This document shows positions 16,261 through 42,819 of a stretch of DNA of 64,000 nt, piece by piece; the stretch's first letter is position 1; each line of letters opens with the position of its first letter. Below the pieces are notes generated by a model. It made no database searches and was not told the origin of the DNA. It saw only the letters and a program-made list of their open reading frames with translations. Position numbers and translations under genes: made by a program. The stretch is from IMG/VR virus record IMGVR_UViG_3300027985_001318, positions 1 to 64,000 of that record. One strand, 5' to 3'.

Positions 16261-17766
16261 ATGTTTGACAAGTTTCCACGGGCGCCGAGTATGCGTCCAT
16301 TTTTGAACATAGGTTTTCCTTTTGATATCCAGACCGGCAAGTACTACACGGGTAAAGATGGCGAGAGTATCTTGAATGGTGGCTTGCAGCATGTTACTGG
16401 AATTGGTGGTGGCGGTAACCTCTACAAGTCCACCGTACTGCACTACATGCATCTGATTGCCCTGGAGCGTTACGGTGCGGCTTGTGGGATGGTCTACGAT
16501 ACCGAGCCGCCTAGCTGTAACTATCCGCGTTTTGAACAACTCTCCAAACGCATGCTGCGACTCACTGAGGGTAGTTTGCGCGATCGACTACTGCTGACCG
16601 ACTCCACAGTAATCGTCGGTAACAAGTGGTTTAAGCAGTTAAAAGAAGCGATCGACTTCAAGCTGAAGTCAGGCAAAGACGGTTATGCTGAAACTCCCTT
16701 CTTGGATGAAAAGGGCAATAAGATCAAAACTCTGTTGCCCAATCTGATCTCTATCGACTCGATGAGTATGTTCACTTCTGACAACGTACAGGACATCCTC
16801 GATGAGAACGAAATCGGGGCTTCTGGTGCCAACATTGAAGCTATGCGTGGCCAGGGCGCTAAGACTCAGATGTTGGTGCAGCTACCCGACATGGCTACTG
16901 GTTCCAATACGTTTATCATGATGACCGCGCACGCCGGTAAGCAATACCAGATGGATCCTCGGACCCCGCTGCAGAAACAACTTACGTTCCTGAAGCAGGA
17001 CGTTAAGTTCAAGAACGTACCTGAGAAGTTTTTGTTCCTGACTAACAACCTTTGGTACGCGGTAGCGGCTTCTCCGATGATTAACCGCACTACTAAGGCG
17101 CCTGAGTATCCTCGCAACAGCAATGACGATCTCTCCGGCAATACCGACCTGATGCTCGTTACGTTCTCTAACCTGCGGGCTAAGAATGGTCCTTCCGGTA
17201 TGCCTTTCGAACTGATCATTTCTCAATCGGAAGGCTATCTGCGCGAACTCAGCGCTCTGCACTATCTGAAGAACAGTGATCGTTTTGGTTTGGGTGGTCA
17301 CGACCGCGCCTATTTCTGTCATCTGCGTCCAGATGTTTCTCTCCAACGCACCACCGTGCGTAGCAAAATCGACGGGGATGCTAAGCTGGGGCGTGCTATC
17401 GAAATCTGCGCAGAACTCTGTCAGATTACCAACCTCTGGCTCGACACGCCAGCCAGTGTTCTTTGTACCCCTGAAGAACTCTACCGCGACATCGCTGCGA
17501 TGGGCTATGATTGGGAAGAGTTGTTGGACACGCGTGGTTTCTGGGTTTACGAGAACGACAAACATCCGCAGAATTTCCTTTCCACTAAGGACTTGCTGAT
17601 GATGCGTGTTGGTAAATACCAGCCGAAATGGGCTACGCGCAAAGCTTCAGTCAGTCCATCGACTGTTACCAAGGAAGAAGTTGGGGTGGATTCAACGACT
17701 AACGTGGTAGAGCTTAAACCGAAACATCTGGTTAAGGCTTCTTTGGGCGAAGCTACTGCCGCCTAA
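16261..17766 (+). CDS. uvsX: UvsX/RecA-like recombinase (phiKZ gp152-like)
   Basis: P-loop GGGGNLYKST, YDTE, Walker B ISIDS, MTAH, RAKNGPSG. Confidence 0.85.
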   Translation: MFDKFPRAPSMRPFLNIGFPFDIQTGKYYTGKDGESILNGGLQHVTGIGGGGNLYKSTVLHYMHLIALERYGAACGMVYDTEPPSCNYPRFEQLSKRMLRLTEGSLRDRLLLTDSTVIVGNKWFKQLKEAIDFKLKSGKDGYAETPFLDEKGNKIKTLLPNLISIDSMSMFTSDNVQDILDENEIGASGANIEAMRGQGAKTQMLVQLPDMATGSNTFIMMTAHAGKQYQMDPRTPLQKQLTFLKQDVKFKNVPEKFLFLTNNLWYAVAASPMINRTTKAPEYPRNSNDDLSGNTDLMLVTFSNLRAKNGPSGMPFELIISQSEGYLRELSALHYLKNSDRFGLGGHDRAYFCHLRPDVSLQRTTVRSKIDGDAKLGRAIEICAELCQITNLWLDTPASVLCTPEELYRDIAAMGYDWEELLDTRGFWVYENDKHPQNFLSTKDLLMMRVGKYQPKWATRKASVSPSTVTKEEVGVDSTTNVVELKPKHLVKASLGEATAA

Positions 17767-17775
17767 TTAAACAGT

Positions 17776-17799
17776 TAGGGAGAGCTTCGGCTCTCCCTA
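17776..17799 (+). other. Stable UUCG hairpin abutting the next SD
   Basis: TAGGGAGAGC-TTCG-GCTCTCCCTA then GGAGG; no U-tract. Confidence 0.6.
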
Positions 17800-17809
17800 G
17801 GAGGGTTTT

Positions 17810-18208
17810 ATGACTTTGGTAAAAATAGATCTCTGCGAACGCGTTATTTCTGATAAAGCTTTAGAAGAAATCAAGGAACGTAAGGTAGTCTATGGCGAAG
17901 ATCAAGATCTACTACGTCAAGACCTGGATCTTTGCGCGACTCCAGAAGAACGCTATAAACGGTTTTGTTTAGTGAATCCCGATAAGATCAGTTTTGTCGC
18001 TGATAACTTCGAGATCGATCAGAACGGTAGTCTCACTGCAGATATTCGTCCTCTTGATCCTGATGTAAACAATTTGTTAGATAAAGGACATTTTGGGATC
18101 CGTGCGCTGGTTTCTAATGTACCCAACGCCAATGGTGAAATTATTCCATCCATCGATAAAGTAATCTCTATCGATTGGATATCGAATACTGTTTCCCTGC
18201 CGGAATAA
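17810..18208 (+). CDS. Degenerate paralog of the prohead protease
   Basis: Collinear similarity to 42031-42819: YGE/RGE, DKISF/DCVSH, LTADIRP/IIADVKP, FGIRAL/FSIRSL, KVISIDWI/TIITWDYV. Confidence 0.6.
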   Translation: MTLVKIDLCERVISDKALEEIKERKVVYGEDQDLLRQDLDLCATPEERYKRFCLVNPDKISFVADNFEIDQNGSLTADIRPLDPDVNNLLDKGHFGIRALVSNVPNANGEIIPSIDKVISIDWISNTVSLPE

Positions 18209-18212
18209 ATCC

Positions 18213-18734
18213 ATGGAACAGAAACCTATTACCGTCATAGTCGCCGGTACTCGCGATTTTATCGATAAAGAGTACCTCTTTAAAGTACTGGATAGATATT
18301 TAGGTAAGCGTAATCCAAAGACTATCACAATCCTGGACGGCAAGGCTCGAGGCCCTGATCGCTTCGGTGGTGAGTACGGGGAAGCTAAGGGGATCCGGGT
18401 ACTGCCGTATCCGGCCGACTGGGATAAACACGGAAAAGCTGCTGGTTTTATACGTAACGAGGAAATGGCTTGTGCTGGTAGCCATTTGATCGCTTTCTGG
18501 GACGGAGTGTCTAACGGCACTAAAGATATGATTGAGAGAGCCACCGCACATGGCTTGATGGTTGTAGTGATTAAGATTAAGCCGGAACAAATCGATAGTT
18601 CCTGGAAAGAACGTTACAAAACCAGAGGGGAACAAAATAATGTCCAGAGAAAAAGCAACCAAGTTTATGCTCGATCTAATCGAAACGCTCGTCCCTGGGA
18701 CGCCAAACAAAGAGCTGACCAAAAAGCGGCTTGA
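18213..18734 (+). CDS. SLOG-family (YspA/DUF2493-like) protein
   Basis: IVAGTRDF, GKARGPD, YPADWDKHGKAAGFIRNEEM, AFWDGVSNGTKDMI. Confidence 0.85.
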   Translation: MEQKPITVIVAGTRDFIDKEYLFKVLDRYLGKRNPKTITILDGKARGPDRFGGEYGEAKGIRVLPYPADWDKHGKAAGFIRNEEMACAGSHLIAFWDGVSNGTKDMIERATAHGLMVVVIKIKPEQIDSSWKERYKTRGEQNNVQRKSNQVYARSNRNARPWDAKQRADQKAA

Positions 18735-19302
18735 GCGACTTTCTGACGAGCAGTTTGCGGAGCTTATGGATCGGTTCGAAAAAGGCACCGACTATATCCA
18801 GATCATCATTCCTCCGTCGATGAGCAATAAGTTCACTATGGAAAATATCGACGCGGCGGCGGCCAAGGTAAACATCCGTTTGTTTCAGCGGTTGTGGCTT
18901 ACGGATCAGACCACAGGGTTACTTAGTCTCACTCCTAAACCAGCTCTGGTACTCACTCTGCCTGATCGGCGGCAATCTCAAACCCGTTTGAAGAAGTCCT
19001 CAAACGCCCATGACAACAACCATATCGACGAACTGACCGGCCAGCCGACTGGCGATTCTAAAGCCAGTAGTATTTCTAACCCCCAGTTTTTGATTCTGCT
19101 TTCGCGTTCTCTCAATAACACCATGGAAGAATTCGCAAAAGTACGTGGTGGCGATAACAAAGCGTTCAACTACTCAAACAAGGTCATTCACCAGCGTGGG
19201 AACGTAACGCTGGCAGAACTACGCGAACTGGGTAGCCGAGCCAAGTCTAGTGAGACTCTCTCTAGTTACTGGACGGCCCAACACTTAGGGAATAACATGT
19301 GA
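18640..19302 (+). CDS. Virion RNA polymerase beta-like subunit, C-terminal part (phiKZ gp149-like)
   Basis: DELTGQPTGDSKASSIS and EEFAKVRGGD resemble the RpoB C-terminal TQQPLGGKA and QEMLTVKSDD motifs. Confidence 0.8.
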   Translation: MSREKATKFMLDLIETLVPGTPNKELTKKRLERLSDEQFAELMDRFEKGTDYIQIIIPPSMSNKFTMENIDAAAAKVNIRLFQRLWLTDQTTGLLSLTPKPALVLTLPDRRQSQTRLKKSSNAHDNNHIDELTGQPTGDSKASSISNPQFLILLSRSLNNTMEEFAKVRGGDNKAFNYSNKVIHQRGNVTLAELRELGSRAKSSETLSSYWTAQHLGNNM

Positions 19303-40532: not shown

Positions 40533-41300
40533 ATGGAAATCGAACTCATTTCTGGTAAGTCGAGGAAGAACCAGCTCGGTATGTTCAAGAACATGCAGAG
40601 AAGTTCCTCACTCACCCATCAGGACTGGATTGAACTACCTGACGGTTCTATCATTACGAAAGAAGGTTGTAAAGTTTATTTCCCTGTTAGCTGGACTGAG
40701 TGCGGTTTGGCTTCCGTTGGCGACGACATCCAAGTACTCGGCTTCTTCACCGCAGTGTACGGTAGTCGCTTCACGGTAGGATCGGCTATGTCCATGGTGC
40801 GGTTAAGTCCGGCTATCGTGAACATCGTTAAGGGTTTTGACGAAGACTATTACGAGCTAACTTTCGACCAAGGCGGCTTGGTTATGGAAACCTCCGCGAT
40901 AGTTATCGACGATACTCTTTCTTACCGGGTTTACAAACGTTTCGTGGAAATGGGAAAAGTCCCTATTTACATGGATTCGTTGGATATCATCACGATGTTC
41001 AAGAACGTACGTTATTGCTGCGGCAGTAAGCTAGGCGATGGAGAGTCTGTATTGACAGCTATTAGTTGTTCGATACTTCGAGACCCACAGGATCTCAGCA
41101 GACCCCTTAGTTTGTCCAAAGAAGGTCCTTTCTCGCATGGCGACTATGATTTCGTGATTGTTCCGTTCAGAGATGTTCAATTCGGTGCCAGCAACGTTAC
41201 GGCGAAAGTTAGCGGTAGTTACGCCGACATTGCTATCAACTCAGCCCTAGTGAACCCAAGTGATCGCTCAGAGGCTATGGAAGACGGATTACGGCTATGA
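40533..41300 (+). CDS. Conserved virion protein (phiKZ gp176-like by synteny; possibly vRNAP-associated)
   Basis: 255 aa; C-terminal TAKVSGSY..AINSALVNPS faintly resembles the RpoC C-terminus. Confidence 0.6.
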   Translation: MEIELISGKSRKNQLGMFKNMQRSSSLTHQDWIELPDGSIITKEGCKVYFPVSWTECGLASVGDDIQVLGFFTAVYGSRFTVGSAMSMVRLSPAIVNIVKGFDEDYYELTFDQGGLVMETSAIVIDDTLSYRVYKRFVEMGKVPIYMDSLDIITMFKNVRYCCGSKLGDGESVLTAISCSILRDPQDLSRPLSLSKEGPFSHGDYDFVIVPFRDVQFGASNVTAKVSGSYADIAINSALVNPSDRSEAMEDGLRL

Positions 41301-42034
41301 CCATTGATGCTGAAGAACGTAAAGAATTTGATCGTGCAATTGAATTGCTTCCTGACTCTGTCTCCAAAGGCCTTAAGGTTGTTTCACCGTCTGACTTACC
41401 GGCCGGTACTTTGTACCATATTTCAACCAATCATAACATCCCGACTTTTATCCCTTGCGTTTCTAAGCGCACTATGGAAGGAGAGGATCGTACCGTACCG
41501 AGGGTTTGTGTTAGTCCGGACGTATTGAAGGCCATGCTTGGCTACGGCGCTGTTTACAGCGATTTCCAGGATTGGGACGAAAAGAAACAGCGTTTGAAGA
41601 ACAACGCTTATTGGATGATCTATCGCTTCGATTTCGACTTGGCGATTCGTCCAGTTAAACGCCTGCTACCGGATCAACGTGATACCGATGAACACTGGTT
41701 AATCACTTACTCCAAAAAGACTCGCGAGTATAAACCCACTAAAATCGGCAAGCTGAAGATGGTTGGTTACAGTACTCAGTACAAGAATGGTCAGATGGTT
41801 GATCGCCTGGAATTGGTGATCGAAGTCACTGGCTCAGAAATCCTTTTCTCTGACGGCGTGCTGTTAACTAAGGGGTTTTATAAACTTTGTCTTTCTAACT
41901 GGAAAGTAAGTAACCGAAAACATACAGAGATTTCGGTTACAAGCACTGCTATCAAGAAAGACGAGTACGACGCTTACATGAGAGAACGGGTTTCTCTTGA
42001 ACATTTACCACCATCTGCTTCCTGGGGGTCATGA
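41297..42034 (+). CDS. Putative ADP-ribosyltransferase-fold virion protein
   Basis: LYHIS...FIP...GEDRTVPRVCVSPD...DTDEHWL gives an H / S / E pattern; C-terminal VSLE-HL-PPSASW. Confidence 0.45.
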   Translation: MTIDAEERKEFDRAIELLPDSVSKGLKVVSPSDLPAGTLYHISTNHNIPTFIPCVSKRTMEGEDRTVPRVCVSPDVLKAMLGYGAVYSDFQDWDEKKQRLKNNAYWMIYRFDFDLAIRPVKRLLPDQRDTDEHWLITYSKKTREYKPTKIGKLKMVGYSTQYKNGQMVDRLELVIEVTGSEILFSDGVLLTKGFYKLCLSNWKVSNRKHTEISVTSTAIKKDEYDAYMRERVSLEHLPPSASWGS

Positions 42035-42819
42035 TGGCTACTGCTACTTTGATCTACGCTGGCGATCCATTGGCCGGCACTAACAAGGCCGGTAAGCTCA
42101 AAGTCAACGATGAAGGTTATTACCTGGACGTTGTTTTGGGCGCACTGGATGTTTTCAATTCGGCTGGCGCTATGTATGTTTCTGAACCGGCTTTGCCGTT
42201 GTTCAAAGACAATACTAACCTTCAACGTCAAGCCCAGACACGGAATCTCCGTGGCGAGTACGGCCATCCAAAACGCCTGCCGAACCAATCCATCCAGGAT
42301 TTCGTTCGCCGCTGCTGTACTATCTACGAAGACTGTGTTTCTCACCACATGACTAACTTGCGTTTGATGCCTACCAATCAGCCTGGCGCTAAAGGCAAGA
42401 AGGTTATCCTGATTATCGCTGACGTCAAGCCCTGCGGTCCTCACGGAGCGGTTCTGAAAGCTCAGCTCGATAACCCGAACGAAAACGTCTGCTTCAGCAT
42501 TCGTTCTCTGACCGAAGACGTGATGGTTGGTGGGGTGATCGAGAAACGTCTCCGCACCATCATCACCTGGGATTACGTGAACGAGCCTGGGATCAGTTAC
42601 GCAAACAAGTTCCAAAGTCCTTCTCTGGAATGCGTGTATGGTGATGATGTGATTATCACGGCCGATATCGTTCGTTCGTTGCAGTCTGACTACGAAGCTT
42701 CTGGCATGGGCAATGAGAGTTACGGCCTGGCACTGGAAAGCGTGGTGGCTGCTTTCGGACTTGCTGAGCTCGAGCACAAGCAGAAAGAATTCGCTGTTCC
42801 TCCTAGCGCCAGCTGGTAA
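42031..42819 (+). CDS. Prohead maturation serine protease (phiKZ gp175 / T4 gp21-like)
   Basis: LRGEYGHP, VSHH, FSIRS, TWDYVNEPG; C-terminal SLE and ALE candidate autocleavage sites. Confidence 0.88.
   Translation: MMATATLIYAGDPLAGTNKAGKLKVNDEGYYLDVVLGALDVFNSAGAMYVSEPALPLFKDNTNLQRQAQTRNLRGEYGHPKRLPNQSIQDFVRRCCTIYEDCVSHHMTNLRLMPTNQPGAKGKKVILIIADVKPCGPHGAVLKAQLDNPNENVCFSIRSLTEDVMVGGVIEKRLRTIITWDYVNEPGISYANKFQSPSLECVYGDDVIITADIVRSLQSDYEASGMGNESYGLALESVVAAFGLAELEHKQKEFAVPPSASW

What the first reader, a model, noticed from the sequence alone, without database searches (positions are those of the whole stretch)
17810..18208. Probable catalytically dead paralog of the prohead protease
Seen: the 132-aa ORF aligns collinearly with the protease at 42031-42819: VYGE/LRGE, KRFCLVNPDKISF/RRCCTIYEDCVSH, LTADIRP/IIADVKP, FGIRAL/FSIRSL, KVISIDWI/TIITWDYV. 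The presumed catalytic His (VSH) is Phe and the presumed catalytic Ser (FSIR) is Gly. It also lacks the C-terminal PPSASW tail. Inference: a pseudoprotease that could regulate head maturation, poison the protease oligomer of a competing phage, or decoy host sensors of phage proteases.
Basis: partly seen in the sequence, partly recalled or inferred. Interest (0 to 1): 0.6.

Follow-up and report, generated by a model that had tools for sequence, protein, structure and literature searches.

The report
Dead mini-copy of phage head protease
A small gene in a giant (phiKZ-like) phage genome encodes a shrunken copy of the phage's own head-maturation protease that has lost its catalytic serine and histidine; inactive protease copies of this kind were already described in related giant phages in 2017, so this is a very diverged new example, not a new kind of thing.

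Summary
The 132-aa ORF at 17810-18208 (+) is real. It has a strong ribosome-binding site, is tightly packed between genes, and uses codons typical of the genome. A related phage in an independent wastewater metagenome carries it too.

It becomes significant against a profile that also holds the known diverged protease paralogs of giant phages. That profile gives 22.6 bits and E 2.5e-6 over all 923 genome ORFs, rank 2 after the protease, and 0 of 20,000 shuffles reach the score. The published paralog SPN3US gp117 scores the same in a leave-out control. The ESM Atlas features and the ESMFold model (TM 0.74) also point to S80/S77 proteases.

The protein covers only the protease core (about residues 86-185). 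It has Gly96 at the catalytic Ser and no His at either conserved His position. It keeps the conserved Arg51, Arg98 and Asp122, and it lacks the C-terminal targeting tail.

The conclusion "inactive" still holds. The function is unknown. My best guess is a non-catalytic binding module.

Truncated, presumably inactive protease paralogs were described by Ali et al. 2017, so this is a new member of a known kind.

The parts
17810..18208 (+). ORF132: 132-aa coding sequence (stop included), a minimal inactive homologue of the S80 prohead protease core
   Evidence: ORF list. In-frame codon-usage score is 0.231 bits/codon against a genome reference of 0.274 +/- 0.099; the other frames score lower, four of five below zero. 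A relative in wastewater run X4 carries it. Profile HMM gives 22.6 bits, E 2.5e-6.
17936..18190 (+). Protease-homology core, residues 43-127, aligned to about residues 86-185 of the protease (helix, two beta-hairpins and the helix between them)
   Evidence: HMM alignments. The order of secondary-structure elements in the ORF model matches the protease model in this register. ESM Atlas structure match has TM 0.74 over 123-124 residues.
18095..18097 (+). Codon GGG = Gly96, at the position of the catalytic Ser (protease S156; SPN3US gp245 S153)
   Evidence: Alignments, residue mapping and the S153A mutant that abolishes autocleavage (PMC7411985).
18173..18175 (+). Codon GAT = Asp122, the retained counterpart of the third triad residue (protease D181; gp245 D178)
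   Evidence: Invariant column in the 15-row alignment and mapping. No change is listed at this codon in the wastewater relative, though that list is incomplete.
17799..17804 (+). Shine-Dalgarno AGGAGG, 5 nt upstream of the ATG
   Evidence: Read directly from the sequence.
17776..17799 (+). 10-bp stem-loop with a TTCG loop between the UvsX-like gene and ORF132, abutting the SD. Its role is unknown (RNA stability or a weak terminator).
   Evidence: Sequence and the terminator scan.
42031..42819 (+). The phage's full-length S80 prohead protease (262 aa), with H79, S156, D181 and the C-terminal P-P-S-A-S-W tail. This is the reference for the comparison.
   Evidence: PF20034 7.7e-69, phrog_3014 3.1e-68, AF2 model matching T4 gp21 5JBL at probability 1.00, and catalytic mapping to SPN3US gp245.

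Best explanation
ORF132 is a real gene of a phiKZ-like (nucleus-forming type) jumbo phage; the record is 223,650 bp with direct terminal repeats. It encodes a minimal, catalytically inactive homologue of the phage's S80 (phiKZ gp175 / T4 gp21-like) prohead protease. It keeps only the central core of the fold, about residues 86-185 of the protease. The N-terminal strands, the GHP loop with the catalytic His, the Ser nucleophile (now Gly96) and the C-terminal propeptide with its Trp-ended tail are all gone. In SPN3US that propeptide is thought to take the enzyme into the prohead. ORF132 belongs to the class of truncated or diverged protease paralogs already seen in giant phages (SPN3US gp117, PhiPA3 gp142/gp143, 201phi2-1 gp206, Xoo-sp14 gp75), and it is the most degenerate one I saw. 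So far this is shown: homology, loss of the catalytic residues, truncation, and presence in a second sample. The mechanism is inferred, at about 0.3 probability. Every paralog type, ORF132 included, keeps Arg51, Arg98 (the Arg of the FSIR motif) and Asp122 while losing Ser and/or His. From this I infer that the protein still binds something the protease binds, namely the Glu-ended cleavage motifs of head proteins or the protease itself, without cutting. It would then act in the cytoplasm, not inside the prohead, because it has no targeting tail. It evolves fast: 12 nonsynonymous against 7 synonymous codon changes relative to the wastewater relative, where the neighbouring UvsX-like gene shows 1 against 14. 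That pattern fits an accessory role, not a core one.
For: Gene reality: ORF and strong SD, coding-frame codon signal, and a relative in an independent wastewater run with net in-frame indels (3+1+2 nt). Homology: a 21-sequence profile without ORF132 gives 22.6 bits, E 2.5e-6 over 923 genome ORFs, rank 2, with 0 of 20,000 shuffles reaching it; the published paralog gp117 scores 22.4 bits in a leave-out control. Smaller mixed profiles give 13.0 and 17.8 bits, also rank 2. ESM Atlas: the nearest named clusters are Peptidase_S77/S80 (0.94-0.95). With those excluded, the nearest are YonD_N, DUF2213 and Mu-like_Pro. The ESMFold model (pTM 0.69) matches S80 clusters at TM 0.74 over 123-124 of 132 residues. 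The secondary-structure order matches in register. Inactivity: G96 sits at S156; there is no His at H79 or H106 and the only His is H94; the mapping H79/S156/D181 = gp245 H77/S153/D178 is verified; S153A kills gp245 autocleavage (PMC7411985). Class precedent: Ali et al. 2017. Every paralog I aligned lacks at least one catalytic residue, and several have Gly at the Ser position, as here.
Against: Standard tests see nothing. Pfam and PHROG scans give no hit. phrog_7478, the short-paralog family, does not match. A pure S80 profile and hhalign are marginal (P about 0.01-0.02). Profiles built from a single paralog group do not match. The single-sequence AlphaFold2 model is poor (pLDDT 51) and finds no protease in BFVD, PDB or the Atlas. 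I tried seven profiles, so some multiple testing applies, although the margin is large. No homologue exists among 1.84 billion representative proteins, so no covariation or deep alignment is available. The binding mechanism is pure inference: no expression, localisation or interaction data exist.
Confidence: 0.8

Rival explanations
1. Same identity, but no function: ORF132 is a decaying remnant of a duplicated or recombined protease gene (the 'cryptic protease' of Ali et al. 2017), still open by chance and drifting.
For: It is an ORFan in all databases. The ratio of nonsynonymous to synonymous changes against the wastewater relative is high, 12:7, compared with 1:14 in the neighbouring UvsX-like gene. 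GC and GC3 are low. It sits in a slot that varies among 30 relatives. It has lost the N-terminal strands, both His residues and the Ser.
Against: The frame is intact in two samples, and the three small indels sum to a multiple of three. It has a consensus SD and tight gene packing. The substitutions listed in the core are conservative (V>I, I>L, Y>F). The residues invariant across all proteases and paralogs (R51, R98, D122) are retained. Inactive paralogs persist in several distinct, highly diverged forms across phage lineages, which argues for selection on some non-catalytic role.
Confidence: 0.3
2. Chance resemblance: ORF132 is an unrelated small alpha+beta protein, and the protease similarity is an artefact of a common helix-plus-meander-sheet arrangement.
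Against: The mixed profile gives E 2.5e-6 genome-wide and no shuffle comes near. All aligners agree on the register. In the ESM feature search 16 of the 30 nearest clusters carry S77, S80, YonD_N or DUF2213. The domain boundaries are the same as in known short paralogs.
Confidence: 0.06
3. ORF132 is an active protease that uses unconventional residues, for example His94 two residues before the old Ser position, together with Ser61 or Asp122.
For: His94 lies at position -2 from Gly96, which on a beta-strand would put it on the same face (my inference). An 'HFG.R' motif is shared with the paralogs of IMG/VR relatives G005 and G007. Asp122 and Arg98 are kept.
Against: The nucleophile is Gly. The fold is truncated by about half. 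In SPN3US gp245 the S153A change alone abolishes activity. No paralog of this class has been shown to be active.
Confidence: 0.03

Closest known systems
[quoted passage not shown] 2017, PMC5694885), including 201phi2-1 gp206 (145 aa) and PhiPA3 gp143 (136 aa); PHROG phrog_7478
   Same: It is a short protein (130-170 aa) encoded away from the head-protease gene, in a genome that also has a full-length S80 protease. It is homologous to the protease core. It ends just after the Asp motif, so it lacks the C-terminal propeptide, and at least one catalytic residue is missing. ORF132 scores 22.6 bits against the mixed profile, and gp117 scores 22.4 bits in a leave-out control. PhiPA3 gp143 and its PS119XW homologue also have Gly at the Ser position (LGVRGL against FGIRAL).
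   Different: ORF132 does not match phrog_7478 or any single paralog group. It lacks both the Ser and the GHP His, whereas gp117 keeps Ser and Asp and gp143 keeps His. Its first 42 residues align to nothing. It sits next to the UvsX-like recombinase gene, not near the capsid genes as in PhiPA3.
Xanthomonas phage Xoo-sp14 gp75 (151 aa) and three metagenomic relatives (P0123-P0125)
   Same: This is a short S80 paralog in one of the nearest sequenced phages. It covers the same part of the protease (hhalign against S80: 98.5%, E 2.3e-15, protease residues 62-185). It lies in an accessory region with no counterpart in this genome.
   Different: It is readily recognised by Pfam and PHROG. It keeps the Ser in 3 of 4 members and loses only the GHP His. 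It shows no detectable direct similarity to ORF132.
Peptidase family S80 (phiKZ gp175, SPN3US gp245) and S77 (T4 gp21, PDB 5JBL): active prohead proteases with the herpesvirus-assemblin-like fold
   Same: They share the core fold elements and conserved non-catalytic residues: the Arg of F-S-I-R, the P-x-x-P turn, and the Asp of W-D-Y-V. ESMFold-based TM is 0.74 to S80 clusters.
   Different: ORF132 has no Ser nucleophile, no catalytic His, no N-terminal beta-strands (the DGYY..VVLGAL region), and no C-terminal propeptide or Trp-ended tail. It falls below every curated family threshold.
Longer S80 paralogs (194-273 aa) in IMG/VR relatives G005-G008
   Same: They are inactive-looking copies. The GHP His is replaced, and the Ser is replaced by Gly or Arg (FGIR, FGMR, FGLR, FRMR). 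Two of them share the H-F-G-x-R motif with ORF132.
   Different: They keep the N-terminal part of the protease domain and carry a C-terminal extension of roughly 90-110 residues after the protease-like region. They are detected by Pfam at 1e-13 to 1e-15. A profile of these five alone does not pick up ORF132.

Membership tests
Peptidase S80 (active prohead protease, Pfam PF20034) | Matches the family HMM above the gathering score | tested here: not met
   No Pfam family at E <= 1. The PF20034 search of the whole genome finds only 42067-42723. A profile of 36 S80 proteases gives 1.4 bits.
Peptidase S80 (active prohead protease, Pfam PF20034) | Catalytic Ser in the F-S-I-R motif (gp245 S153; S156 here) | tested here: not met
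   Gly96 occupies this column in all alignments.
Peptidase S80 (active prohead protease, Pfam PF20034) | Catalytic His in the G-H-P motif (gp245 H77; H79 here) | tested here: not met
   The motif region is absent or unaligned. The only His in ORF132 is H94. Phe62 sits at the second invariant His, H106.
Peptidase S80 (active prohead protease, Pfam PF20034) | Third triad residue, Asp in W-D-Y-V (gp245 D178; D181 here) | tested here: met
   Asp122 is aligned, in a column invariant across the 15 rows.
Peptidase S80 (active prohead protease, Pfam PF20034) | C-terminal propeptide ending in P-x-S-x-[RK/S]-W | tested here: not met
   ORF132 ends 10 residues after the Asp motif. The tail is present in most of the 36 proteases, and the final or penultimate Trp is present in all of them.
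Truncated/diverged S80 protease paralogs of giant phages (Ali et al. 2017; phrog_7478 and kin) | Significant homology to the protease core in profile searches | tested here: met
   22.6 bits, E 2.5e-6 over 923 ORFs, rank 2, with 0 of 20,000 shuffles reaching it; this equals gp117's leave-out score.
Truncated/diverged S80 protease paralogs of giant phages (Ali et al. 2017; phrog_7478 and kin) | Matches the PHROG model of the short paralogs (phrog_7478) | tested here: not met
   No hit at E <= 1. The genome search with phrog_7478 finds only the true protease.
Truncated/diverged S80 protease paralogs of giant phages (Ali et al. 2017; phrog_7478 and kin) | Coexists with a full-length S80 protease in the same genome and is encoded elsewhere | tested here: met
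   The protease is at 42031-42819 and ORF132 at 17810-18208 in one complete record with terminal repeats.
Truncated/diverged S80 protease paralogs of giant phages (Ali et al. 2017; phrog_7478 and kin) | Lacks the C-terminal propeptide and at least one catalytic residue | tested here: met
   See the table of catalytic columns and the alignment.
Truncated/diverged S80 protease paralogs of giant phages (Ali et al. 2017; phrog_7478 and kin) | Adopts the T4 gp21 / assemblin-like fold | tested here: inconclusive
   The ESM Atlas's own ESMFold model (pTM 0.69) matches S80 clusters at TM 0.74. My AlphaFold2 single-sequence model (pLDDT 51) matches nothing meaningful.
Truncated/diverged S80 protease paralogs of giant phages (Ali et al. 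2017; phrog_7478 and kin) | Absence of proteolytic activity, and a defined non-catalytic role | not testable with these tools
   This needs purified protein and substrates. No member of the class has been assayed, to my knowledge; only PMC5694885 discusses them.

The most novel reading that the evidence does not exclude
The recurrent, fast-evolving, catalytically dead protease copies of giant phages, with ORF132 as the minimal form, may be substrate-groove 'readers'. They keep the Arg/Arg/Asp set and bind Glu-ended S/A/G-X-E motifs. The phage would use them outside the capsid, for example to shield propeptides from premature cleavage or to block the head protease of a co-infecting rival jumbo phage. 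That would make them a family of pseudoenzyme regulators or competition factors, not gene debris.
Probability: 0.12. Interest if true: 0.55.

Novelty: new member of a known kind. Interest (0 to 1): 0.3.

Why it matters
The finding adds an extreme data point to a little-studied pattern. Giant phiKZ-like phages repeatedly keep extra copies of their head protease that have lost catalytic residues in different combinations, while retaining the same few core residues. If these copies have a function, they would be pseudoenzymes derived from the assemblin-like protease fold, which would bear on how the proteolytic maturation of very large capsids is controlled. On the practical side, the case shows that a profile including known degenerate paralogs can annotate an ORFan that every standard family library misses. 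On its own, this gene is an ordinary accessory gene of unknown role.

Tried and rejected
- **Searches for homologues of ORF132:**
  - tblastn against 50,697 phage records found none.
  - The word-indexed search of 5.8 billion proteins found only ORF132 itself.
  - Exhaustive phmmer over 1.84 billion representatives found ORF132 itself plus P0122. P0122 is a 1202-aa translated tandem repeat whose score is summed over 9 repeats, so I rejected it as spurious.
  - The IMG/VR scan found none.
- **Family libraries:** Pfam, PHROGs, NCBIfam and PADLOC gave nothing usable. The PDB sequence search gave nothing.
- **Synteny:** the gene after UvsX in Xoo-sp14, RP12, Eowyn and 30 IMG/VR relatives is different each time and is unrelated to ORF132 or to S80.
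- **Single-group profiles:** the Xoo-sp14-type group and the IMG/VR long paralogs do not detect ORF132.
- **Complex prediction** of protease 1-200 with ORF132 returned 'no answer' (score 0.01, mark 0.34). It is no evidence either way.
- **A weak third-ranked ORF** in the profile searches (genome 149013-149879) belongs to an unrelated family, phrog_3315, and was dropped.
- **RNA evidence:** no RNA run holds the stretch.

Full report
**Context.** The window is the first 64 kb of a complete virus record of 223,650 bp with direct terminal repeats. It encodes a Peptidase_S80 prohead protease at 42031-42819 (PF20034 7.7e-69, phrog_3014 3.1e-68). Its AlphaFold2 model matches T4 gp21 (5JBL) at probability 1.00. 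It also encodes a UvsX-like recombinase at 16261-17766 (phrog_97). The nearest sequenced phages are jumbo phages of Xanthomonas, Ralstonia, Pseudomonas and Klebsiella, at only 40-50% protein identity. The DNA is held whole by two metagenome runs, one labelled hydrothermal vent, and either may be the source of the record.

**The observation.** ORF132 (17810-18208, +) exists as described.
- It starts 44 nt after the UvsX-like stop.
- A 10-bp stem-loop with a TTCG loop (17776-17799) precedes it, and a consensus AGGAGG sits 5 nt before the ATG.
- It ends 5 nt before the next gene, a YspA/SLOG-domain protein.
- Its in-frame codon score (0.231 bits/codon) is within the range of the genome's long ORFs (0.274 +/- 0.099) and beats the five other frames.
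- Its GC is low: 40.7% against 47.3% for the genome, and GC3 35% against 53%.

**An independent second occurrence.** Short contigs of a related phage in a wastewater metagenome (run X4) cover codons 1-81 and 107-132 at 89-92% nucleotide identity. The adjacent UvsX part is 96% identical. Three small deletions (3+1+2 nt at codons 57-60) sum to a multiple of three. Among the listed differences, ORF132 has 12 nonsynonymous and 7 synonymous codon changes, while UvsX has 1 and 14. The gene is therefore real, present in a second sample, and evolving fast.

**Is the similarity more than chance?** Taken alone, barely.
- BLASTP gives 20.8 bits and E 0.011 for the single comparison, and spurious ORFs in the same genome score as high.
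- hhalign against 36 S80 proteases gives P 0.018 and probability 2.6%.
- An HMM of those 36 gives 1.4 bits; 44 of 5000 shuffles reach it, and the ORF ranks 9 of 923.
- No homologue exists in any database searched. The one extra hit, P0122, is a translated tandem repeat.

**Independent evidence from the ESM Atlas.**
- By language-model features, the nearest named clusters are Peptidase_S77/S80 (0.94-0.95).
- With those two families excluded, the nearest are YonD_N, DUF2213 and Mu-like_Pro.
- The Atlas's ESMFold model (pTM 0.69) superposes on S80 clusters at TM 0.74 over 123-124 of 132 residues.
- The order of secondary-structure elements in my weak AF2 model is H45-55, E62-69, E74-81, H84-89, E94-105, E111-124. 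It matches the protease model (H88-95, E103-118, E124-134, H139-147, E154-166, E169-183) in the register of the sequence alignment.

**The literature and the decisive test.** Ali et al. [quoted passage not shown] They described it as truncated and presumably inactive. I collected such paralogs:
- PhiPA3 gp143 and the neighbouring gp142, and PS119XW gp146.
- Xoo-sp14 gp75 with three metagenomic relatives (positive control against S80 at E 2.3e-15).
- Five longer paralogs from IMG/VR relatives G005-G008.
- SPN3US gp117 itself.

Profiles of full proteases plus these paralogs, aligned without ORF132, detect ORF132 with rising strength:

| Profile | Score | E over 923 genome ORFs | Rank |
|---|---|---|---|
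| 14 sequences | 13.0 bits | 0.0025 | 2 |
| 19 sequences | 17.8 bits | 8.3e-5 | 2 |
| 21 sequences | 22.6 bits | 2.5e-6 | 2 |

For the 21-sequence profile the next ORF scores 3.1 bits, and none of 20,000 shuffles exceeds 9.2. In a leave-out control the published gp117 scores 22.4 bits, so ORF132 is as well supported as the founding member. I tried seven profiles in all. That multiple testing does not touch a conditional E of 3e-9.

**Anatomy.** The aligned core is ORF132 residues 43-127 against about residues 86-185 of the protease. My alignment reproduces the published mapping: our H79/S156/D181 correspond to gp245 H77/S153/D178, and gp117 aligns at S126/D144.
- ORF132 has Gly96 at the Ser.
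- It has Phe62 at the second invariant His (H106).
- Nothing aligns to the GHP loop, and its only His is H94.
- It keeps Arg51, Pro81, Pro84, Phe95, Arg98 and Asp122. R94, R158 and D181 are the only columns invariant across proteases, paralogs and ORF132.
- It lacks the C-terminal propeptide.

Every paralog I aligned has lost at least one catalytic residue, in different combinations, and Ser-to-Gly recurs.

**Genomic setting.** The slot after UvsX differs in every relative examined and never holds an S80-like gene. Other phages carry their paralogs elsewhere, and the Xoo-sp14 paralog region has no counterpart here. ORF132 is thus a lineage-specific accessory gene. Whether it arose by duplication within this genome or came in by recombination cannot be told.

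**Mechanism.** What is shown is homology, loss of the catalytic residues, truncation, and loss of the tail. The rest is inference. Without the tail, the protein is unlikely to be packaged the way the protease is. The retained Arg/Arg/Asp set suggests that it still binds a ligand of the protease, either Glu-ended cleavage motifs or the protease itself, so I favour a non-catalytic binding or regulatory role at about 0.3. The main rival is that it is functionless debris, also at about 0.3. A complex prediction with the protease gave no verdict (listed under Tried and rejected only).

**Verdict.** This is a new, extremely diverged member of a known kind, of modest interest.

Noticed in passing
window 41297-42034 and 42031-42819; L008 (Klebsiella phage Eowyn): The 245-aa protein encoded just upstream of the protease (phrog_5043) ends in LPPSASWGS, and the protease ends in VPPSASW. 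The six shared residues use different codons, so this is not a recent DNA duplication. Eowyn has the same extra gene, and there too its tail (RGSELW) resembles its own protease's tail (IGSQLW). A P-x-S-x-[RK]-W end is common in S80 proteases. The tails seem to co-vary within a phage, as a shared docking peptide for the prohead would.
   Followed up: partly
window 17205-18337, seen in sequencing run X4 (wastewater metagenome): A related phage occurs in a wastewater sample. Its UvsX part differs almost only at synonymous sites (14 against 1), whereas ORF132 has 12 nonsynonymous and 7 synonymous codon changes plus net in-frame indels at codons 57-60.
   Followed up: partly
IMG/VR relatives G005-G008 (loci L048-L051): Four relatives carry longer (194-273 aa) S80 paralogs, with two in tandem in G006. 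All lack the GHP His and have Gly or Arg at the Ser position, and each carries a C-terminal extension of unknown nature after the protease-like region. PhiPA3 likewise has two tandem paralogs, gp142 and gp143.
   Followed up: partly
window 18089-18103 (residues 94-98, HFGIR): ORF132's only His sits two residues before the lost Ser position, where proteases have a nearly invariant Cys. The same H-F-G-x-R motif occurs in the paralogs of G005 and G007. Its meaning is unknown.
   Followed up: no
window 17776-17799: A perfect 10-bp stem with a TTCG tetraloop lies directly between the UvsX-like stop and the Shine-Dalgarno of ORF132. The 3' arm abuts the SD, so folding could affect translation start or RNA stability.
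   Followed up: no
window 18213-18734 and 18640-19302: The gene downstream of ORF132 encodes a YspA/SLOG-domain protein (PF10686 1.3e-13; homologous to Xoo-sp14 gp162, E 1e-15). Its basic C-terminal tail overlaps the next ORF by 95 nt as listed (the lister takes the first possible start codon, so the next gene may begin later). The UvsX-to-gp149-like interval holds different small genes in different relatives.
   Followed up: partly
window 17750-18350: There is a local GC dip to about 41% over ORF132, against 47-52% in the flanking genes. This fits a recently acquired or fast-evolving accessory gene.
   Followed up: partly
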